The notes below the pieces were generated by a model. That model was not told the origin of the DNA, searched no databases, and saw only the letters and a program-made list of their open reading frames with translations. The translations under genes and the position numbers were made by a program. This document shows, in pieces, positions 18,612-33,654 of a stretch of 64,000 nucleotides of DNA. The stretch lies in the sequence record OZ195934.1; one strand, written 5' to 3'. Every line of letters starts with the position of its first letter. Position 1 is the stretch's first letter.

Positions 18612-18636
18612 AAAAAAAGGACGCTATCTGCGTCCT
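18612..18636 (-). terminator. Rho-independent terminator
   Basis: AGGACGC-AGATA-GCGTCCT-T tract on minus strand. Confidence 0.8.
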
Positions 18637-19148
18637 TTAGTTTTGTTTCTTTTTAGTTTTCGTTTGAGCTTGCGAACTTCTTTACGCTTCGCGATTTTAT
18701 CAGCTCGTCGAACCGCGTCATAATCCGCAGCACAAGACGCTGCAAACGCATCGGGCTTGAATACTGGCTCTTGACCCACATATCCGAAGATCGTGCCCTT
18801 AGCTTCGTTATACGCGACGCTAGACTTGTGTTTAGGGTCTGGGTTAATGTCAACGTGTACTTCAAAGCCGCGAGGGCCGCACATTGGCTTAACTTTCAAC
18901 GCACATTCACCTGCTTTGTATACTTCGTTCATCAAGCGGCTACGAATACCATCAGTAGATGACATATAGGCTTTCTCAGTTTCGATTGTTTTGAATACTT
19001 GAGCGCCTTTACTGCCTTCCAAGTGAATTATGATTACAGTCGCGTAACTGATCATATCACTTTTTCGTTTACTGTCACACCCAACATAGATCGTGCTACT
19101 CGGGTGACTATTTTGAATCGCTGTTTCTACAGCTTCCCAATCGAACAT
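18624..19148 (-). CDS. YkuK/DUF458 RNase H-like protein
   Basis: IYVGCDS, YATVI, RLMNEV, VHVDIN, FKPDAFAASCAAD. Confidence 0.8.
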   Translation of the reverse strand: MFDWEAVETAIQNSHPSSTIYVGCDSKRKSDMISYATVIIIHLEGSKGAQVFKTIETEKAYMSSTDGIRSRLMNEVYKAGECALKVKPMCGPRGFEVHVDINPDPKHKSSVAYNEAKGTIFGYVGQEPVFKPDAFAASCAADYDAVRRADKIAKRKEVRKLKRKLKRNKTKGRR

Positions 19149-19197: not shown

Positions 19198-20631
19198 TTA
19201 TAAAGCGTATCGGTCGACACCGACAGTCTTCAGCATGATTTTCACTGGCTCAAGCTCACCACCCAACAGCGACGTTAGAATTGAAGGGCTGCAACCCGAC
19301 ACTAACGCTGTGTTCGCTTCACCTGATTTAACAGGCACGTTGTCTAGACGACCACGCAAGTTCCAGAACACTAGTTGCGGCATTTCGTAGCCCGCGTTCG
19401 CATACATGACTTTGATTGCATCGAAGTTCGTAGTGTTACGAGTATGCCAGCCACCGCCAGTACGAGCTTGATCGAATTCCATATCGCTCATGATAAGCAA
19501 TTTGGTTGGCATTTCGTCTTGCGACAAGTTTGCCGTACGAGCGCGTTCAAGAAGAACTTCGAAGCATCGTGTGATGTTCGTGCTCATATCTTCGCCAGAT
19601 CGTTGCATGTTGTCAAGACGCGACTTCAAGCTATCACCCGTCAACTTGTGAAAGTGCGGATCACTTGAGAACGAAATGAATTGATCTTTGAAGATACCCT
19701 CATTACGTTCAGCGACGTAGATGCCAAGAGACATCGCAACTTCTTTACAAGTCACACTACCACCGTGTTCACCGTTGATACCACAGCCCATAGAGCCAGA
19801 AACATCAACAACTGGAATCACGCGCTCGTCAGAGCCTTCCATGTAGTTCGGTAGAGCTTTCCATTGCTCATTTGCAACACGATGGTCACCCATTTTAACG
19901 CTGCGAACAACATCGTACGGGTAAACAGCACCTGCATTGATCTTCGCTTCACCTTTCACAAGCGATGTGATGTACTCACCGTATGCAGATTCAGCGTTAC
20001 GACCGAATGCTTTCTGATAGCGTGCAGACGCTACAGATGGCAGTTTGCCGAACTCGATCTCGTCCCAATTACGAGCACACATCTTCTGTTCAACAGTGTC
20101 AGACAAAAGAGAGATCACTTTACGCCACTGCTTCGCGTTTACACCAACCGACTTGATTGTGCGCTTGAACACGATAGCGTTTTTGCTGCGCTCACGAGGA
20201 AACCACTTAGCAGCAAGCGCGTTTTTGTCATTGACAATCGCGTGTGTCCACAGAGTGATAGCATCAGCTTCAAGAGAAGTACCGAACGCAGATACTAAGT
20301 CATCGAAACGACCAAGTTCTGGGATCTTGCGCATAACTAGACGCGCCACTTCTGGTTGTTCTTTACACAGACGTGCAAAGATTTTGCGGAAAGTACCGCG
20401 CTCACCTGCACCGCCACGCACGTCGCGAGACCATAGCAAGATGCGAGTTGCAAGCTCAGGGTTTTCACCGAATGCGCGATTAAACGCAGTTAGTGACTGA
20501 TCATTACCGCGCATAGCGCCGATAGTGAAGAACAAGTTTAGACACTCGTTACCCGAAGTGCTGTGTGTTACTGCACCGTTTGCTGTACGTGAATCGTTAG
20601 ATTGCATAGCGTTCATAAATAAACTAGTCAT
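19198..20631 (-). CDS. DUF2828 Ro60/TROVE-related protein with C-terminal vWA domain
   Basis: RDVRGGAGER, AAKWFPRE, VYPYDV, VVDVSGSM (MIDAS), SDMEFD, LVFWNL; GGAG SD before ATG 20631. Confidence 0.85.
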   Translation of the reverse strand: MTSLFMNAMQSNDSRTANGAVTHSTSGNECLNLFFTIGAMRGNDQSLTAFNRAFGENPELATRILLWSRDVRGGAGERGTFRKIFARLCKEQPEVARLVMRKIPELGRFDDLVSAFGTSLEADAITLWTHAIVNDKNALAAKWFPRERSKNAIVFKRTIKSVGVNAKQWRKVISLLSDTVEQKMCARNWDEIEFGKLPSVASARYQKAFGRNAESAYGEYITSLVKGEAKINAGAVYPYDVVRSVKMGDHRVANEQWKALPNYMEGSDERVIPVVDVSGSMGCGINGEHGGSVTCKEVAMSLGIYVAERNEGIFKDQFISFSSDPHFHKLTGDSLKSRLDNMQRSGEDMSTNITRCFEVLLERARTANLSQDEMPTKLLIMSDMEFDQARTGGGWHTRNTTNFDAIKVMYANAGYEMPQLVFWNLRGRLDNVPVKSGEANTALVSGCSPSILTSLLGGELEPVKIMLKTVGVDRYAL

Positions 20632-20667
20632 TGCTGTAAGCTCCAAATATCAAGGATCAGAAAAATA

Positions 20668-21258
20668 ATGTTTCATATTGTATATCAAATAACAAATTTA
20701 ATAAACAACAAAATTTACGTCGGTAAGCATTCAACCGAAAACATTCATGACGAATACATGGGTTCGGGAAAGCTTTTGCTCAGAGCCATTAAAAAGTATG
20801 GCAAGGAGAATTTCACAAAAGACATACTGTTCGTATCATTAGACGAAAAGGATGCATATAAAGCAGAACATGAGATCGTGAATGAAGATTTTGTTCTCCG
20901 TGAAGACACATATAATCTCAAAGTTGGCGGTCTTGGTGGATCATCAGGAATAGAATCTCCATGCAAAGGTCGTCAACTGAGTGAAGATACTAAACTAAAA
21001 ATGAGAAAAAGTAAACAATTTTCTCAAAAACATTTAGATTATCTCTCAACTAAATTATCTGAGTACAACAAATCTAGACAAGGTGTTCAAAGAGACGATC
21101 TAAAGGGTAACTCAAACCCAATGCATCGAGGTAATTGGCATACACCCCACGGAATATTTGAAACATCAAGCGAAGCAGCGTGTGCCATAAAATGTAGTCA
21201 ATCAACAATTGTTAGACGTTGCAAAAATCCAAATTTTGAGGATTGGTACATCAAATAA
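20668..21258 (+). mobile_element. Free-standing GIY-YIG (Seg-like) homing endonuclease
   Basis: IVYQITNLINNKIYVGKH, YMGSG, YNL; AT-rich, antisense to neighbours. Confidence 0.88.
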
Positions 21259-22197: not shown

Positions 22198-22562
22198 TGA
22201 TAGTCCTTAATGTCGTTGTCGAAGTGACGAATGCACGAGCTATCAAGTCTCGGGCGATCATCGTCTTCAGTGATTGATGGTAGTGTGTAATTATCGTTGA
22301 ACGGCTGACCGCTTGCTTTAGCGATTTCGTACGCGTCTGCACGATTGAAATACTCACCACAATAGTTGATGAAACCTTGCCCGCGATCACCGAGTTCTTT
22401 TCGATGTTCGATTGTACAGCCCGCTTTCTTCAGTGCTTTCATTACACCAGACATGTTGCGACCGAAGTGACAGCTATCAGCTATCACAAGTTCTTCAGTC
22501 GAACCATCGGGGTATGTTACGCGTATCGCGTTTGCAGCAGCAGAAATAATGTTTACGTGCAT
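22194..22562 (-). CDS. Conserved hypothetical phage protein
   Basis: QGFINYCGEYFNRADAYEIA..GQ pattern. Confidence 0.6.
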   Translation of the reverse strand: MHVNIISAAANAIRVTYPDGSTEELVIADSCHFGRNMSGVMKALKKAGCTIEHRKELGDRGQGFINYCGEYFNRADAYEIAKASGQPFNDNYTLPSITEDDDRPRLDSSCIRHFDNDIKDYQ

Positions 22563-22909
22563 GTATCGAGCCTCATAAAAATGTTACCGATTTTCTTGTA
22601 CTGTTTAGACGCCATGATCATGTTCGTCATCTTCAAGTTACCGACCGGATTGCTCGTTACAAGAACAATCGTGTACGGATAATTGCGATGATCCATAGCG
22701 TGTGATAGAATATCGCTTCCCTCTTTGCCGACTACATCACCGAGATCATTGTCCATTAGCAACGTAATGTCAGTCAAGTTCGTGTGCTTCACGAAATTCA
22801 TTCCCTGTTCGAACGTTCGAAGTGTCAGCTTTTGAGCTGCATTCACTGTGTCGTTCGTCAACTTGTTGATGTCTCGAAGATCATCAATCAAAATATACAT
22901 GTGTTTCAT
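22553..22909 (-). CDS. Cyclic-phosphate-processing receiver (cREC)-like protein
   Basis: ILIDDLR, LMDNDLG, EGSDIL, TSNPVG match stand-alone receiver pattern LDD.R / DHDLG / S.Np.G. Confidence 0.7.
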   Translation of the reverse strand: MKHMYILIDDLRDINKLTNDTVNAAQKLTLRTFEQGMNFVKHTNLTDITLLMDNDLGDVVGKEGSDILSHAMDHRNYPYTIVLVTSNPVGNLKMTNMIMASKQYKKIGNIFMRLDTCT

Positions 22910-23155
22910 TACACAACCTCTAACCAATATGCTAATTCATTTGCTGAAGCTAAAGCAGGCGTATAAGAAATCCAGTAGTCTAGATTCTGAGTCATCGACT
23001 CAAGATAGCAATACTCTGAGTCTGCGCTGAAACGATAAATAAACTCATCGTCTTTATACGCATCGACCACTTTAGAACGAGGATTGACTTTAACATCGAA
23101 CCCCGCGTTCTTAAACAACGCAATTGCTGTCTCGTGTTCTGCTTCAAGTAGCGTC
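22909..23155 (-). CDS. Hypothetical protein
   Basis: ORF from MTLLEAEH downstream of a TTGACA promoter. Confidence 0.55.
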
Positions 23156-26614: not shown

Positions 26615-26920
26615 TGACTGTCACGAGGAATCTAGTCTTCTTTAAGTGCCTTTCGGCTGTAATAAAGTACAGACAATAACGAAGTGTTTTTTCGTCTTTT
26701 ACATAAATCGCAGTTGACTATCTTGTTACTCTAACAAGCAAGTATCGACTACCTCAGCGTCGCGCCTAGACTGTGTATTTCTACACGCCACATCTTTCGT
26801 TACAAGTCTCGACCTAGCACGTTGTTGCTGTGCTGAACGTCTCGAACCCACGCTAAGACCTAATCATTGTTTTAGTAGATTAGTAGTTTGGTTGCTGCAT
26901 ATTGTCTTACGTGACAGTCA
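26615..26920 (-). ncRNA. Large motif RNA E2 (nested end-pairing)
   Basis: 11-bp IR TGACTGTCACG/CGTGACAGTCA enclosing AGACAATA-TGCAGCAACC...TATTGTCT (26671-26907). Confidence 0.7.
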
Positions 26921-27002
26921 AACACACAATGCCGAAACAATATGCCGAGACGTTCACGCTCTTATTTTTCAAGTTCACACTATCGTAGTGACTCTCGTGA
27001 TA

Positions 27003-27078
27003 TGGCATCCCCAGAAAGATTTGAACTTTCAACCCCGAATTTAGAAGATTCGTGCTCTTCCAATTGAGCTATGAGGAC
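27003..27078 (-). tRNA. tRNA-Arg(TCT)
   Basis: Cloverleaf, loop CTTCTAA, CCA. Confidence 0.93.
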
Positions 27079-27154
27079 ATCAATAAGATTCGAACCATAA
27101 GATCTTGTGACACGATGGTAGTAAAGAGAGTGTCTATCTCATGTGTTCGAAATT

Positions 27155-27230
27155 TGGTGGAGCTTGAGGGTTACGATCCCTCTACTTCTCCGTGCAAGGG
27201 AGATGTTTTACCGATTAGCACTAAAGCCCC
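27155..27230 (-). tRNA. tRNA-Ala(TGC)
   Basis: G3:U70, loop CTTGCAC; atypical T-loop ATCGTAA. Confidence 0.9.
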
Positions 27231-27237
27231 AAATTGT

Positions 27238-27450
27238 CTATTTTAACTCTGTGACGCCTATATTTTTCCAATCAAACAGACCATCGACATCTTCAAGCGA
27301 TTCGCCAGTCACGTCTGCAATATAAGCAGCGACTTTCGATTCGATTTCGTCATTACTTAGAGACTCATCAACAGTGAAAATCTCTTCGTTGTTATTACCA
27401 CCGAATGTGCCGTTAATGTCGTATTCACACCAAACTGATATGTATTTCAT
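27238..27450 (-). CDS. Small acidic hypothetical protein
   Basis: 70-aa ORF with GAGA SD. Confidence 0.6.
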   Translation of the reverse strand: MKYISVWCEYDINGTFGGNNNEEIFTVDESLSNDEIESKVAAYIADVTGESLEDVDGLFDWKNIGVTELK

Positions 27451-27475
27451 AATGTCTCACAAAGTTAATAAAATA

Positions 27476-27550
27476 TGGTGCTCCCGGACAGACTCGAACT
27501 GCCATAACCTGATTACAAAACAGGGATAATCGCCTTTATATTACGGGAGC
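27476..27550 (-). tRNA. tRNA-Thr(TGT)
   Basis: Cloverleaf, loop TTTGTAA, CCA. Confidence 0.9.
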
Positions 27551-27556
27551 GAAACT

Positions 27557-27666
27557 GAGTGTCGTTTATACCGCGTCTCCAAGACCTGAGATACCAACTC
27601 AGCATGGGATTCGAACCCACCGACGTTTCTTGTATCGAAAGAAATTTTAAATTGCTGTAAACACTC
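27557..27666 (-). ncRNA. Circularly permuted tRNA-like RNA E3 (YrlA-like topology)
   Basis: GAGTGT-T-TACAGCAA, anticodon-like hairpin, GTGGG TTCGAAT CCCAT T-arm, loop-closed acceptor, D-like hairpin, AAACG-ACACTC. Confidence 0.8.
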
Positions 27667-27675
27667 TTAGTATTT

Positions 27676-27749
27676 TGGCTGGGGATAACGGACTCGAACC
27701 GATACTGCGAAAGTCAAAGTTTCGTATGCTGCCATTACATCAATCCCCT
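27676..27749 (-). tRNA. tRNA-Gln(TTG)
   Basis: Cloverleaf, loop CTTTGAC, CCA. Confidence 0.92.
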
Positions 27750-27757
27750 ATTGTTCT

Positions 27758-27982
27758 TTAGCGACTCGAATTGATCTCATCGATCATTCGTTTAGCTAGT
27801 TTCGTAGCTAGTGCTTTATCAGCATCGCCAGTTGTTTCTATGTCGTATGCAATTTTACTCACATACTTTGAGTCTAGCGCACCCGCTGATTGTTTAGACC
27901 AGTGATCCTTGACTTTCTGATATTTCGTCATGTCAATCGAATCTTTTGTCGCTTCACCCAAAAATTCTGCTAATGTTTTCAT
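27758..27982 (-). CDS. Candidate internal head protein (T4 IP-like)
   Basis: MKTLAEFLGEA capsid-targeting-like N-terminus; TATAAATA at 28012-28019. Confidence 0.7.
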   Translation of the reverse strand: MKTLAEFLGEATKDSIDMTKYQKVKDHWSKQSAGALDSKYVSKIAYDIETTGDADKALATKLAKRMIDEINSSR

Positions 27983-28022
27983 ATCTCTATTCTTATTAAA
28001 GTGTAAAAACATATTTATATGC

Positions 28023-28171
28023 AAGATAACATACACGACGGCGTAAGTAGTCGTTCTTATGTTTAGACTAGAAATCCACGTCACATCATTAATGCTATAA
28101 TTGCGCCACTCTCTACTATGAATATGTTATGCATTATTCATGCAGACTCTTCTTGCGCTGTAAATTATCTT
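28023..28171 (-). ncRNA. Motif RNA E4
   Basis: AAGATAA-T-TTACAGCGCAA ... ATG-TTATCTT; starts right after tRNA-Asp CCA. Confidence 0.65.
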
Positions 28172-28247
28172 TGGCGGAACTGACGGGGCTCGAACCCGCT
28201 TCCTTCTCCGTGACAGGGAGGTATGCACCCAGTTACACCTCAGCTCC
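28172..28247 (-). tRNA. tRNA-Asp(GTC)
   Basis: Cloverleaf, loop CTGTCAC, G73. Confidence 0.94.
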
Positions 28248-28250
28248 CCA

Positions 28251-28340
28251 AAGATAACTCTTTGTATTAAGACACTGTAATCGTTTGGTTTTTTCTTCAA
28301 ATAAAAAATACTGGTTTGTTTGCAGAATGATTACTATCTT
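28251..28340 (-). ncRNA. Motif RNA E5 (CTGCAAAC subtype)
   Basis: AAGATAG-T-AATCATTCTGCAAAC ... GAG-TTATCTT. Confidence 0.6.
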
Positions 28341-30985: not shown

Positions 30986-31100
30986 TGGCTGACCGATGCG
31001 GGACTCGAACCCACGACCACGTGCTTAACAGGCAATTAGAAATGCGGTAGCGATACTTATCAATATCATTTACGTGCTCTACCACTGAGCTAATCGGTCA
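30986..31100 (-). ncRNA. tRNA-Asn(GTT)-like RNA with 38-nt insertion after nt 28
   Basis: Removing 31035-31072 restores CGTGC-CTGTTAA-GCACG arm; 8-bp acceptor, G73, CCA. Confidence 0.8.
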
Positions 31101-33005: not shown

Positions 33006-33128
33006 TGGTGGAGAGTGCGGGATTCGAACCACGCGGCCAAAAGATTTACTTAGTTAGTGTTTGCAGCATGAATACTTGACAATATTCTGTCAACGTTCTT
33101 TTGCTCTACCAGACTGAGCTAACTCTCC
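33006..33128 (-). ncRNA. tRNA-Tyr(GTA)-like RNA with ~45-nt insertion in anticodon loop
   Basis: Canonical acceptor, D and T arms; AAAGA/TCTTT stem enclosing 52 nt that end AAGTAAA. Confidence 0.8.
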
Positions 33129-33140
33129 ATTTAAAACACA

Positions 33141-33264
33141 TTGAGCAGGGTGCAGGATTCGAACCTGCGTCACGATCTTAGAATGATATGCTGTTTGGGT
33201 TGCTGAATACAAGCTATACAACTTGCGTTTATGCTACGTGTGCTAGCCACTACACCAACCCTGC
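33141..33264 (-). ncRNA. tRNA-Arg(TCT)-like RNA with 49-nt insertion after nt 28
   Basis: Removing 33188-33236 gives CGATC-ATTCTAA-GATCG; ends CAA; 17-bp flanking IR. Confidence 0.8.
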
Positions 33265-33517
33265 TCAATGTGTTCTAGTGCAATGCCATATGAACTCACA
33301 TGGCATCACTGAACCTGTTTTATATTGCCTTAGCTAACCAACACAATCTGAAATCGTGCGCTTTAATAAAGGGAGGGCGTCCCTCTTCGCCAGTTAGCAT
33401 AGATGTGTTGCTATGCACCCATTTGTCAATCATGTCCAAGGCAAACAGAACAATGAATACGAGTGCGAGAAGATATACAATCAAATTGAAACACCTCGCT
33501 AAAAAGTTAGAGCATAT

Positions 33518-33639
33518 TGGTCGTGCGTACTAGAATCGAACTAGTCCTACGATCTCCTAATGATATGCGTTATTGGTTGCTGAATACTTACTTGTCAGTA
33601 AGCGTTATGCTACGTGTGCTGCCACTACACCAACGCACG
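33518..33639 (-). ncRNA. tRNA-Leu(TAG)-like RNA with 48-nt insertion after nt 28
   Basis: Removing 33565-33612 gives CGATC-ATTAGGA-GATCG; ACCA end; 21-bp perfect flanking IR. Confidence 0.8.
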
Positions 33640-33654
33640 ACCAATATGCTCTAG

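What the first reader, a model, noticed from the sequence alone, without database searches (positions are those of the whole stretch)
27557..27666. Circularly permuted tRNA-like RNA (YrlA-like architecture)
Minus strand reads GAGTGT-T-TACAGCAA-TTTAAAA-[TTTCTT TCGATAC AAGAAA]-CGTCG-[GTGGG TTCGAAT CCCAT]-G-[CTGAG TTGGTAT CTCAG]-[GTC TTGGA GAC]-GCGGTAT-AAACG-ACACTC. The order is anticodon-like arm, variable region, T-arm, loop-closed acceptor, D-like arm, with ends paired at the motif helix. This is what the insertion-bearing tRNAs would give if circularised and reopened in the motif hairpin. It has no free 3' CCA, so it cannot be charged.
Basis: partly seen in the sequence, partly recalled or inferred. 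Interest (0 to 1): 0.9.

Follow-up and report, generated by a model that had tools for sequence, protein, structure and literature searches.

The report
Phage Y-RNA-like permuted tRNA mimic
A 110-nt conserved RNA in this vibriophage's tRNA cluster is a tRNA cloverleaf opened at its core and closed by a helix plus a UACAGCAA motif; that motif marks RNAs encoded beside a Ro60-like ring protein in many unrelated phages, so it is most likely a phage "Y RNA".

Summary

Single-sequence folding is not significant (z = -0.98). Across 11 related phages, however, the structure is kept in 96.9% of pair cells, with compensatory changes in the T-arm and the next hairpin.

It is neither a tRNA nor an Rfam YrlA hit. 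Its 5' signature, a 7-bp terminal helix followed by U(A/U)CAGCAA, recurs in unrelated phages (FelixO1, mycobacteriophage LeBron, Staphylococcus phage 6ec, many metagenomic contigs). There it sits beside a DUF2828/DUF7788 gene. The window encodes this protein 6.9 kb downstream, and its predicted structure matches only Ro60 over its full length.

Several family members carry a full T-arm, loop-closed acceptor and D-arm. FelixO1 has a full-size copy of this exact architecture.

Best explanation: a Y-RNA-like partner of a phage Ro60-like ring, with one protein-binding module and one tRNA-mimic module. RNA-protein binding is inferred, not shown.

I rate it a new variant of a known kind.

The parts
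27557..27666 (-). The whole RNA core (110 nt): a five-way junction closed by terminal helix P1
   Evidence: Sequence. Consensus structure and covariation. Orthologues score 80-149 bits with model R1.
27660..27666 (-). P1 5' strand, GAGUGUU. It pairs with 27563..27557 (GACACUC).
   Evidence: Invariant in 11 KVP40-like phages. A compensatory U-A to A-U change occurs in the T4-like contig L131 (GAGUGAU/AUCACUC). P1 sequences are entirely different in other family members.
27652..27659 (-). Signature motif UACAGCAA, directly 3' of the P1 5' strand. Proposed binding site of the Ro-like protein.
   Evidence: CAGCAA is invariant in alignments A1 and A3. The same motif follows a helix in RNAs beside DUF2828 genes in IMG/VR loci, LeBron, 6ec and FelixO1.
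27626..27644 (-). Hairpin A, anticodon-arm-like: U-UUCUU / UCGAUAC / AAGAA-A
   Evidence: The stem is kept, with a compensatory change in 1.081.O (UUCGU/ACGAA). The loop varies from 6 to 8 nt, so it is not a decoding loop. FelixO1 has the counterpart UUUCU CGGUA AGAAA.
27604..27620 (-). T-arm: GUGGG UUCGAAU CCCAU, preceded by the 5-nt variable-like linker CGUCG (27625..27621)
   Evidence: GUUCGAnUC is invariant. Three of the four stem pairs carry compensatory changes.
27586..27602 (-). Hairpin B, CUGAG UUGGUAU CUCAG. Positionally the loop-closed acceptor-like stem. Its loop GGUA is invariant.
   Evidence: Three of five pairs covary. It occupies the place of the acceptor hairpin of L131, L213, LeBron and FelixO1.
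27575..27585 (-). Hairpin C, GUC UUGGA GAC: a miniature D-arm (G10...C25 equivalents, GG in the loop)
   Evidence: Conserved. It occupies the place of the canonical D-arm in FelixO1, L213 and L131. As in L213, it is followed by GCG.
27555..27563 (-). P1 3' strand GACACUC plus the conserved 3' flank AG. The 5' end of tRNA-Thr lies 6 nt after P1.
   Evidence: ACACUCAG is invariant. G at +2 after P1' is seen in 31 of 36 frames next to DUF2828 genes and was not part of the search criterion.
19201..20631 (-). Gene for the 477-aa DUF2828/DUF7788 protein (PHROG 850 'RNA-binding protein'), the proposed Ro60-like partner. It lies 6.9 kb downstream on the same strand.
   Evidence: tblastn. Pfam assignment by homology and precomputed domains. 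PHROG assignment. AF2 model with pLDDT 78. The Foldseek top 8 are all Ro60, E 1e-7 to 3e-5, TM 0.51-0.61. MIDAS residues D276, S278, S280, T351 and D383 are invariant.
26672..26906 (-). Second RNA of the same class (235 nt): GACAAUA-UGCAGCAAC...UAUUGUC-UGUACUUUA, between tRNA-Arg and tRNA-Met
   Evidence: Conserved in KVP40 with the canonical UACAGCAAC. No ORF on this strand.
33009..33128 (-). Insertion-bearing tRNA-like B (ends in CCA). Its anticodon insert holds the hairpin GAAUAU..GUAUUC followed by A-UGCUGCAAAC.
   Evidence: Rfam tRNA 49.8 bits with a 52-nt insert. Hairpin covariation and motif conservation.
33140..33268 (-). Insertion-bearing tRNA-like C. The insert hairpin GCAAG..CUUGU is followed by AUUCAGCAAC.
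   Evidence: The hairpin becomes GAUUC..GAAUC in nt-1 and KVP40.
33516..33643 (-). Insertion-bearing tRNA-like C2, a paralogue of C. The hairpin CUUAC..GUAAG is followed by UAUUCAGCAACCAAU.
   Evidence: The hairpin covaries in three forms and the motif is invariant.
30990..31099 (-). Insertion-bearing tRNA-like A. The insert hairpin GAUAU..GUAUC is followed by a degenerate motif, GCUACCGCA.
20629..20646 (-). Copy of the motif at the start codon of the Ro-like gene: GGAGCUUACAGCAAUG
   Evidence: In KVP40, F86, ValKK3, 1.081.O and nt-1 the leader forms a frame, GACAUU-UUACAGCAA-(SD)-AAUGUC-AG, that encloses the SD and the AUG.

Best explanation
The element is a Y-RNA-like non-coding RNA with two modules.

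Module 1 is the 7-bp terminal helix P1, the adjacent single-stranded U(A/U)CAGCAA, and a conserved G two bases after the 3' strand. I propose it is the docking site for the phage's own Ro60-like ring protein (DUF2828/DUF7788, window 20631..19201).

Module 2 is a tRNA cloverleaf in which all four arms are closed by loops and the chain enters and leaves at the D-arm/anticodon-arm junction. In other words, it is a circularly permuted tRNA mimic with a canonical T-loop and GG-containing partner loops.

The RNA is made as part of the tRNA polycistron. It would be released by the ordinary tRNA-processing cuts at the 3' end of tRNA-Gln (9 nt upstream) and the 5' end of tRNA-Thr (6 nt downstream).

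By analogy with Ro60/Y RNA particles, the RNA would gate the ring, or tether it to a tRNA-recognising partner such as PNPase or a tRNA processing or repair enzyme, during infection.

Shown: the conserved structure, the motif class, its genomic linkage to the Ro-like gene, and the Ro60 fold of the protein. Inferred: RNA-protein binding, processing, and any downstream effector.
For: 1. The structure is conserved with covariation.

2. The exact 5' signature led to contigs L077 and L061. There, 4-5 tandem modules of the form [P1]-UACAGCAA(A/C)AC-[variable interior]-[P1']-(U)GUUAAAU sit under a sigma-70-type promoter directly upstream of a DUF2828/DUF7788 gene. One module in each contig holds T-arm, loop-closed acceptor, UA and D-arm.

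3. The window encodes a 43%-identical homologue (E 3e-114). Its AlphaFold model matches only Ro60 structures over its full length: 1yvr, 2i91, 1yvp, phage phiLo 9l5y/9kop and 9nfa, at probability 1.0 and TM 0.51-0.61. The next hits are isolated vWA domains. The MIDAS residues are invariant.

4. In 80 IMG/VR loci carrying the gene, helix+motif frames on the gene strand within 1.5 kb number 36. The controls give 2 in reversed sequence and 6.2 +/- 2.1 in block shuffles. G at +2, which was not part of the search, is present in 31 real frames and 0 reversed-control frames.

5. The same arrangement is seen in phages of distant hosts. LeBron has three modules after gp53, annotated 'Ro-like RNA binding protein'. 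Staphylococcus phage 6ec has three modules. FelixO1 has four modules in the tRNA array that starts 165 nt after the gene.

6. Model R1, built only from KVP40-like orthologues, finds full-length matches in L213 (45 bits), FelixO1 (43), L131 (39.5), L197 (35.7) and LeBron (23).

7. The leader of the Ro-like gene in five KVP40-like phages is itself a frame that encloses the SD and the AUG. This is what autogenous control by an RNA-binding protein would look like.

8. Published precedent exists. Y RNAs lie beside Ro60 genes, have a Ro-binding helix formed by the two ends plus a tRNA-like domain (V, T, acceptor-like, D), and occur in phages (PMC4201824, PMC12135203).
Against: - No experiment shows that the RNA exists as a discrete species or binds the protein.
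- In the window the RNA is 6.9 kb from the gene, not adjacent to it.
- Rfam YrlA gives no hit, and the YrlA motif GNCGAA is absent.
- Within KVP40-like phages P1 never varies, so P1 covariation comes only from other family members, whose complementarity was part of my search criterion.
- My frame detector found a frame within 1.5 kb in only 33 of 80 loci. Antisense frames are also somewhat enriched near the gene (0.081 per kb against 0.022 per kb far from it).
- The assignment of hairpins B and C to acceptor and D-arm is positional. B's loop UUGGUAU looks more like a D-loop than C's does.
- The leader helix is weak (about -3 kcal/mol, z not significant) and overlaps coding sequence.
Confidence: 0.72

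Rival explanations
1. The element is a tRNA-mimic decoy or sponge that works on its own. It would soak up a host tRNA-targeting factor (an anticodon nuclease, a modification enzyme or RNase P). The helix+motif would then be only a stabilising or processing clamp, unrelated to the Ro-like protein.
For: It sits in a tRNA array and has a canonical T-loop and GG loops. Four further tRNA-likes with blocked anticodon loops lie in the same array. No binding data exist.
Against: This does not explain why the same helix+motif also frames RNAs with no tRNA-like interior (L077 U1/U2/U4, L155, L160, 6ec). It does not explain why these cluster next to the DUF2828 gene, or why the gene's own leader carries the motif.
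Confidence: 0.12
2. The element is a permuted tRNA gene in the sense of Cyanidioschyzon or Thermofilum. The transcript would be circularised and reopened in the acceptor loop to give a working, chargeable tRNA.
For: The order of the arms is that of a permuted tRNA, and the phage family encodes RNA ligases and a 2H phosphoesterase near the array.
Against: - The anticodon-like loop varies from 6 to 8 nt and in sequence among close relatives.
- The acceptor-like stem is 5 bp, with no discriminator or CCA.
- The D-like arm is 3 bp and lacks A14 and A21.
- No bulge-helix-bulge motif is present.
- ARAGORN and the Rfam tRNA model find nothing here.
- The most conserved parts are P1 and the motif, which such maturation would discard.
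Confidence: 0.03
3. The element is a decayed tRNA pseudogene or passive spacer. Its apparent conservation would only reflect the slow divergence of the neighbouring tRNA genes or processing signals.
For: KVP40's annotators called several odd tRNA-likes 'tRNA-Pseudo'. The single-sequence folding energy is unremarkable.
Against: Compensatory changes maintain two helices. Invariant blocks lie outside any tRNA-like part. Full-length homologues exist in FelixO1 and in metagenomic T4-like phages that share no flanking sequence.
Confidence: 0.05
4. The helix+motif is a recognition site for some other factor, with the Ro-like gene linked only because both belong to an RNA-metabolism gene cluster. Candidates are a host RNase that excises RNAs from polycistrons, or another phage protein such as the PF04308 RNase-H-like neighbour.
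For: The frames bracket very different interiors, as a processing cassette would. PF04308 lies directly downstream of the Ro-like gene in the window, KVP40 and L131.
Against: PF04308 homologues occur in only 2 of 88 loci that carry the Ro-like gene. No other window neighbour has a homologue in those loci. The only gene constantly near the frames across proteobacterial, firmicute and actinobacterial phages is DUF2828.
Confidence: 0.08

Closest known systems
YrlA, the bacterial and mycobacteriophage Y RNA with a tRNA-like domain (Rfam RF02553; Chen et al. 2014, PMC4201824; structure preprint 10.1101/312249)
   Same: - The ends pair to form the proposed protein-binding helix.
- The interior is a tRNA mimic ordered T-arm, loop-closed acceptor-like stem, D-arm.
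- It is encoded on the same strand as a Ro60-fold protein gene, and several Y-like RNAs occur per genome.
- Relatives of the window element give sub-threshold YrlA scores: L077 37 bits, L131 32, L213 28, LeBron 40.
   Different: - There is no YrlA hit for the window element at E <= 10, and all relatives score below the gathering score of 69.
- The motif is U(A/U)CAGCAA directly after the helix, not GNCGAAN0-1G.
- An extra closed anticodon-like hairpin is present.
- The acceptor-like and D-like arms are miniaturised.
- The partner protein is Pfam DUF2828/DUF7788, not TROVE.
- The gene lies inside a tRNA array 6.9 kb from the protein gene, against within 4 kb for YrlA.
Thermus phage phiLo Ro60 with Yrl1/Yrl2 (PMC12135203; PDB 9KOP, 9L5Y)
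   Same: It is a phage-encoded Ro60-fold ring with its own small RNAs encoded nearby. The phiLo protein is among the best structural matches of the window protein (E 4e-7, TM 0.53-0.61).
   Different: The phiLo RNAs are stem-bulge-stem RNAs with a CGAA motif and no tRNA-like domain. The proteins share about 15% identity. Binding was shown experimentally for phiLo and not here.
Insertion-bearing 'pseudo-tRNAs' of KVP40-like phages (KVP40 tRNA-Pseudo-3/4/5), present in this window at 30990-31099, 33009-33128, 33140-33268 and 33516-33643
   Same: They have the same helix+WC(A/U/G)GCAA module and the same tRNA body. They are related to the element by circular permutation.
   Different: In them the acceptor ends are free (B ends in CCA) and the module is a hairpin inserted in the anticodon loop. 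In the finding the acceptor is loop-closed and the module forms the RNA's ends.
Phage T4 stable RNAs rnaC and rnaD (species 1 and 2 RNAs) in the T4 tRNA cluster
   Same: They are small stable non-tRNA RNAs of unknown function encoded in a T4-type tRNA cluster. rnaC has a T-arm next to an acceptor-like end.
   Different: They lack the helix+CAGCAA signature. R1 finds nothing there beyond tRNA-level noise (18 bits). No relation was established.
Permuted tRNA genes of Cyanidioschyzon merolae and Thermofilum, and two-piece permuted tmRNA (from general knowledge, not tested here)
   Same: They show circular permutation of a tRNA-shaped RNA at the gene level.
   Different: Those mature into normal functional tRNA or tmRNA. 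Here the permuted form appears to be the end product and cannot decode or be charged.

Membership tests
Rfam YrlA (RF02553) | Covariance-model score at or above the gathering score (69 bits) | tested here: not met
   No YrlA match at E <= 10 on 27400-27800 and none at gathering on the whole window. The 28-bit hit at 33196-33070 is an artefact that joins the T-arm of one tRNA-like to the D-arm of the next.
Rfam YrlA (RF02553) | GNCGAAN0-1G motif near the 5' end, in the helix formed by the two ends (PMC4201824) | tested here: not met
   The 5' region is GAGUGUU-UACAGCAA. No CGAA occurs in any of the 11 orthologues.
Rfam YrlA (RF02553) | tRNA-like domain ordered T-arm, acceptor-like stem-loop, D-arm, with a canonical T-loop | tested here: met
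   The T-arm has invariant GUUCGAnUC. It is followed by covarying hairpin B and then the small GG-loop hairpin C. The full-size equivalent is in FelixO1.
Rfam YrlA (RF02553) | D-arm with the conserved tRNA nucleotides (A14, G18 G19, A21) and the U8-A9 linker | tested here: inconclusive
   Hairpin C keeps only G...C closure and GG. There is no UA linker and no A14 or A21. Hairpin B's loop UUGGUAU carries GGUA instead.
Rfam YrlA (RF02553) | Encoded within about 4 kb of, and on the same strand as, a Ro60 orthologue | tested here: inconclusive
   The strand is the same but the distance is 6.9 kb in the window. Other members of the same RNA class lie 27-700 nt from the gene.
Y RNA in the functional sense | Bound by a Ro60-family protein in vivo | not testable with these tools
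   Only genomic linkage and the protein fold are available.
Ro60 / TROVE proteins (partner protein, window 19201-20631) | HEAT-repeat ring followed by a vWA domain with a MIDAS site | tested here: met
   In the AF2 model, residues 29-259 are all-helical and 271-470 are alpha/beta. The Foldseek top 8 are all Ro60 over their full length. DxSxS, T and D are invariant.
Ro60 / TROVE proteins (partner protein) | Sequence-level match to TROVE or to solved Ro60 chains | tested here: not met
   Pfam gives DUF2828 + DUF7788 only. phmmer finds no Ro60 chain. The profile search reaches the phiLo TROVE protein only at E 0.45.
tRNA | Recognised by ARAGORN or Rfam RF00005; free acceptor ends; 7-nt anticodon loop | tested here: not met
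   There is no call at 27557-27666. The acceptor-like stem is loop-closed, and the anticodon-like loop is 6-8 nt and variable.
Permuted tRNA gene (matures to a working tRNA) | 3' half upstream of 5' half, processing motifs at the junction, 7-bp acceptor with discriminator, conserved anticodon | tested here: not met
   The stem is 5 bp, and there is no discriminator or CCA. The loop is variable. The most conserved parts are the junction helix and the motif.

The most novel reading that the evidence does not exclude
A large, so far undescribed class of phage Y-like RNAs is defined by a helix plus a W-R-CAGCAA module. It would be read by the DUF2828/DUF7788 Ro60-fold ring found in at least 710 sequenced phages, including FelixO1-like coliphages, mycobacteriophage cluster L, Staphylococcus phages and KVP40-like vibriophages.

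The module would be grafted onto tRNA bodies in two topologies. In one it replaces the anticodon loop of an otherwise processable, CCA-ended tRNA. In the other it forms the ends of a circularly permuted cloverleaf. It would also be placed over the ring gene's own ribosome-binding site for feedback control.

The particle would couple the phage's tRNA supply to RNA surveillance, repair or decay during infection.
Probability: 0.45. Interest if true: 0.82.

Novelty: new variant of a known kind. Interest (0 to 1): 0.68.

Why it matters
Ro60/Y RNA particles are known from animals, some bacteria and a few phages, but their role in phage infection is open. The RNAs have been hard to find because they diverge fast.

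This work gives three leads:
- A short, searchable signature ties one RNA class to a very common phage protein that is mostly annotated 'hypothetical', 'vWFA' or 'RNA-binding'.
- It explains the long-standing 'pseudo-tRNAs' of KVP40-type phages as probable ligands rather than junk.
- It shows that the same protein-binding module can be attached to a tRNA body in either of two circular permutations.

The class is present in FelixO1-like phages of E. coli K-12 and in LeBron of M. smegmatis mc2 155. The binding, autoregulation and infection phenotypes are therefore directly testable in laboratory strains.

Tried and rejected
- **Rfam.** Searches at gathering and at E <= 10 gave nothing for the element.
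- **Single-sequence thermodynamics.** Not informative.
- **T4 rnaC/rnaD as homologues.** They share no signature and R1 finds no hit.
- **IMG/VR scan with the 14-base pattern.** Only L077 and L061 were real. A gapped pattern added L213, plus two chance hits inside coding sequence.
- **PDB sequence and profile searches with the protein.** They gave armadillo-repeat artefacts, and TROVE only at E 0.45. Only fold comparison resolved it.
- **PF04308 RNase-H-like neighbour as an obligate partner.** Rejected, because it is present in only 2 of 88 loci.
- **Ideas considered from the sequence and dropped.**
  - A hammerhead-like CUGAUGA...GAAA in hairpin A of some orthologues is not conserved in the window.
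  - A MotA-box or promoter on the opposite strand: the consensus scan finds no promoter-like site at the element on either strand.
  - A boxA-like reading of ACACUCUGUUAAAU fails because only GU..A is conserved in other modules.
  - A retron-like priming AGC is unlikely because there is no reverse transcriptase and the modules are tandem.
  - A protein-spliced intron in the insertion-bearing tRNAs is unlikely because the insert ends give no plausible anticodon loop.
- **CGUACAGCAAACGG inside the Ro-like coding sequence (codons 14-18).** Probably a coding coincidence, since 1.081.O has synonymous changes there.
- **A second covariance model from the canonical members (A3).** Not built, because MAFFT misaligned the 3' strands.
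Full report
**1. The observation.** The window matches Vibrio phage 6E35.1a/D480 at 100% identity over the 1.3-kb segment (27000-28300) that was searched. These are KVP40-like members of the Straboviridae. Its minus strand carries 26 tRNA genes between 25.1 and 32.6 kb. It occupies the 125-nt spacer between tRNA-Gln and tRNA-Thr. The minimum-free-energy fold contains the terminal helix and the three 3' hairpins, but it is not more stable than shuffles (z = -0.98). No ORF of 40 aa or more overlaps the element. No sigma-70-type promoter or terminator consensus lies at it, which fits co-transcription with the tRNAs.

**2. Conservation and covariation.** The spacer is conserved in the whole KVP40-like group at 68-84% identity. 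In an 11-sequence alignment the invariant blocks are GAGUGUUUnCAGCAA at the 5' end, GUUCGAnUC in the T-loop region, GGUA in the next loop, and ACACUCAG at the 3' end. RNAalifold returns five helices: P1, hairpin A, the T-arm, hairpin B and hairpin C.
- On that structure 96.9% of cells are paired, against 48-61% for slid partners.
- Six pairs carry double changes, three in the T-arm and three in hairpin B.
- The covariation score is 0.234, against at most 0.092 for slid partners, and 0 of 500 shuffles reach it.
- Hairpin A keeps its stem, with a compensatory change in 1.081.O. Its loop varies from 6 to 8 nt, so it cannot be a working anticodon loop.

**3. What it is not.** ARAGORN and Rfam call nothing here, even at E <= 10. 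That includes both tRNA and YrlA. The one weak YrlA hit in the window (33196-33070, 28 bits) is an artefact spanning two adjacent tRNA-likes. T4's rnaC and rnaD share no signature with the element.

**4. The lead.** I scanned IMG/VR for GAGTGTTTNCAGCAA. Most hits were chance matches. In two contigs (L077 and L061), however, the pattern heads a tandem series of 4-5 modules under a TTGACA/TATAAT promoter. Each module has the form [7-9-bp helix 5' strand]-UAC(A/U)GC(A/G)A(A/C)AC-[variable interior]-[helix 3' strand]-(U)GUUAAAU. The helices differ in sequence from module to module.
- One module in each contig holds a T-arm, a loop-closed acceptor-like hairpin, UA and a canonical D-arm.
- Directly downstream lies a 476-479-aa protein with Pfam DUF2828 + DUF7788.
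- The window encodes a homologue at 20631..19201 on the same strand (43% identity, E 3e-114). It belongs to PHROG 850, 'RNA-binding protein'.

**5. The protein has the Ro60 fold.** Sequence and profile searches of the PDB miss Ro60. An AlphaFold model built from a 30-sequence alignment (pLDDT 78, pTM 0.78) has an all-helical N-terminal part and an alpha/beta C-terminal domain.
- Foldseek against the PDB returns Ro60 entries as the eight best matches, all over their full length. These are Xenopus 1yvr/2i91/1yvp, Thermus phage phiLo 9l5y/9kop, and the 9nfa Ro60/La complex.
- Those matches have E 1e-7 to 3e-5, probability 1.0 and TM 0.51-0.61. Every later match is an isolated vWA domain.
- The MIDAS residues (DxSxS, T, D) are invariant.

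**6. Linkage of the RNA signature to the gene.** I took 80 IMG/VR loci that carry the gene and ran a simple detector. It required a 7-bp helix, WWCWGCRA immediately after its 5' strand, and the 3' strand within 400 nt.
- It finds 36 frames on the gene strand within 1.5 kb of the gene. The controls give 2 in the reversed sequences and 6.2 +/- 2.1 (maximum 10) in block shuffles.
- The density is 0.166 per kb near the gene and 0.037 per kb far from it.
- Many frames start 27-300 nt after the stop codon.
- Complementarity was a search criterion, so it is not independent evidence.
- Independent features are the excess over controls, a G two bases after the 3' strand (31 of 36 real frames, 0 in the control), and the tRNA-like interiors of several frames.

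**7. Breadth.** tblastn finds the protein in 710 phage records. These include FelixO1-like phages of E. coli and Salmonella, mycobacteriophages (annotated 'Ro-like RNA binding protein'), and Listeria, Staphylococcus, Campylobacter, Enterococcus, Bacillus and Aeromonas phages. The RNA signature is next to the gene in very distant members:
- LeBron has three tandem modules after gp53. The middle one has T-arm, acceptor hairpin, UA and D-arm. It scores 39.8 bits on YrlA, below the gathering score of 69.
- Staphylococcus phage 6ec has three modules.
- FelixO1 has four modules inside the tRNA array that begins 165 nt after the gene.

The model built only from the KVP40-like orthologues (R1) recovers several relatives over its full length: L213 (45 bits, E 4e-7), FelixO1 (43 bits, E 1e-6), the T4-like contig L131 (39.5 bits), L197 (35.7 bits) and LeBron (23 bits). 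L131 and L213 carry almost the same P1 as the window (GAGUGAU/AUCACUC and GAGUGUU/ACACUC), and they also stand at tRNA arrays.

**8. Reading the arms.** The FelixO1 module at L224 6464-6586 reads as follows: P1, UACAGCAAAAC, linker, UUUCU CGGUA AGAAA, AGGA, GAGGG UUCGAUU CCUUC, ACUCGGC AGGU GUCGAGU, UG, GUGU AAUGGUA GCAC, linker, P1', UG. By position, then:
- Window hairpin A is the anticodon-like arm, and the next 5 nt are the variable loop.
- Hairpin B is the loop-closed acceptor.
- Hairpin C (GUC UUGGA GAC) is a shrunken D-arm.

A caveat is that B's invariant UUGGUAU loop looks like a D-loop. Some relatives (L197) have a T-arm followed directly by a D-like hairpin with no acceptor hairpin. 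Which GG loop meets the T-loop is therefore not settled.

**9. Relation to the insertion-bearing tRNAs.** The window has four tRNA-likes with inserts of about 50 nt in the anticodon loop. KVP40 annotates three of them as tRNA-Pseudo-3/4/5.
- Alignments show that each insert holds a 5-6-bp hairpin with a UGACAA-type loop. The hairpin covaries: GCAAG/CUUGU against GAUUC/GAAUC, and CUUAC/GUAAG against UAAUC/GAUUA against CAAGU/GCUUG.
- The hairpin is followed by U(A/G)UWC(A/G/U)GCAA.
- Opening that hairpin in its loop and closing the acceptor gives the order P1, motif, anticodon stem, variable loop, T, acceptor, D, P1'.

A further 235-nt RNA of the class lies at 26906..26672 and is conserved in KVP40. 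KVP40 also has a 56-nt module upstream of tRNA-Asn.

**10. A possible feedback site.** In KVP40, F86, ValKK3, 1.081.O and nt-1 the leader of the Ro-like gene reads GACAUU-U(U/A)(A/U)ACAGCA(A/U)-...GAGGAA...-AAUGUC-AG. This is a frame whose interior holds the Shine-Dalgarno sequence and whose 3' strand holds the start codon. RNAfold predicts that helix in all five phages, but it is weak. In the window a GIY-YIG homing-endonuclease gene on the opposite strand (20668-21258) has displaced the leader. GGAGCUUACAGCAAUG remains.

**11. Mechanism, with its status marked.**
- Shown: a conserved, structured, tRNA-derived RNA; a shared helix+motif class; its linkage to a Ro60-fold gene.
- Inferred from published Ro60/Y RNA biology (PMC4201824, PMC12135203): the helix+motif docks on the ring; the tRNA mimic either stabilises the RNA or recruits a tRNA-recognising partner; the RNA is released from the polycistron by tRNA-processing cuts; and the protein represses its own translation through the leader frame.
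- The biological purpose in infection is unknown. Candidates are RNA surveillance, capture of PNPase, or protection or repair of the phage tRNA pool. The array lies between a 2H-phosphoesterase/ligase-like gene (57B) and the Ro-like gene, with a cREC receiver-domain gene nearby. That fits an RNA-repair theme but proves nothing.

**12. Comparison and novelty.** The element works like a YrlA-type Y RNA, but it fails two defining tests of that family, the covariance-model score and the GNCGAA motif. Its partner is not an annotated TROVE protein.
- The searchable literature holds nothing on DUF2828 in phages.
- It holds nothing on KVP40 pseudo-tRNAs as ligands.
- It holds only a speculative mention of Y RNAs near the homologous Listeria phage gene (PMC12282133).
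- Chen et al. 2014 reported YrlA-like RNAs in 22 phages. LeBron-type RNAs may be among them, but the supplementary table is not held, so partial prior description cannot be excluded.

I therefore rate the finding a new variant of a known kind.

Noticed in passing
window 26672-26906 (minus): A second RNA of the same class (235 nt), GACAAUA-UGCAGCAAC...UAUUGUC-UGUACUUUA, lies in the ORF-free gap between tRNA-Arg and tRNA-Met. Its 3' half is 82-86% conserved in KVP40-like phages, and KVP40 has the canonical UACAGCAAC.
   Followed up: partly
window 30990-31099, 33009-33128, 33140-33268, 33516-33643 (minus): Four tRNA-like genes carry inserts of about 50 nt in the anticodon loop (KVP40 calls three of them tRNA-Pseudo-3/4/5). 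Each insert holds a covarying hairpin with a UGACAA-type loop followed by the WC(A/U/G)GCAA motif. B ends in an encoded CCA.
   Followed up: partly
window 20629-20646 (minus); KVP40-like leaders in L218-L222: The Ro-like gene's leader in five relatives is itself a helix+motif frame that encloses the Shine-Dalgarno sequence and the AUG (GACAUU...AAUGUC-AG). This suggests translational self-control. In the window the leader is altered but keeps UUACAGCAAUG.
   Followed up: partly
window 20668-21258 (plus): A GIY-YIG (SegE-like) homing-endonuclease ORF lies on the opposite strand, directly upstream of the Ro-like gene. It is absent at this place in KVP40, and it probably displaced the original leader.
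   Followed up: no
window 18627-19148 and 22556-22927 (minus): A PF04308 RNase-H-like (DUF458) gene lies directly downstream of the Ro-like gene, as it does in KVP40 and L131. A cREC_REC 'cyclic-phosphate processing receiver' domain gene lies 2 kb upstream. PF04308 is not a general neighbour (2 of 88 loci).
   Followed up: partly
window 33070-33196 (minus): The weak Rfam YrlA hit (28 bits) joins the T-arm of tRNA-like C to the D-arm of tRNA-like B. This is an adjacency artefact of the kind Chen et al. warn about for tandem tRNAs.
   Followed up: yes
L224 (Salmonella phage FelixO1) 5750-6600: Four helix+UACAGCAA modules share the 5' context CAGAAGACC. They lie inside the tRNA array that begins 165 nt after the DUF2828 gene. 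They overlap 'unknown' ORFs (such as ORF94) annotated on the opposite strand, which are probably spurious.
   Followed up: partly
L223 (Listeria phage cka14) 2473-3024: A ROOL-like RNA (86 bits, gathering score 99) lies about 1 kb upstream of the DUF2828 homologue, among tRNA genes. It may account for some of the highly transcribed regions reported for the related phage CKA15. My detector found no clear helix+motif frame there.
   Followed up: no
L131 1010-1170: Directly after the Y-like RNA of this T4-like contig come two tRNA-shaped sequences that ARAGORN misses. One ends in ACCA, and Rfam scores the other as tRNA (40.9 bits at 1093-1166).
   Followed up: no
window about 20580-20595 (minus): CGUACAGCAAACGG occurs inside the Ro-like coding sequence (codons for R-T-A-N-G) and is kept in most KVP40-like phages. 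1.081.O has synonymous changes there, so this is probably a coding coincidence.
   Followed up: partly
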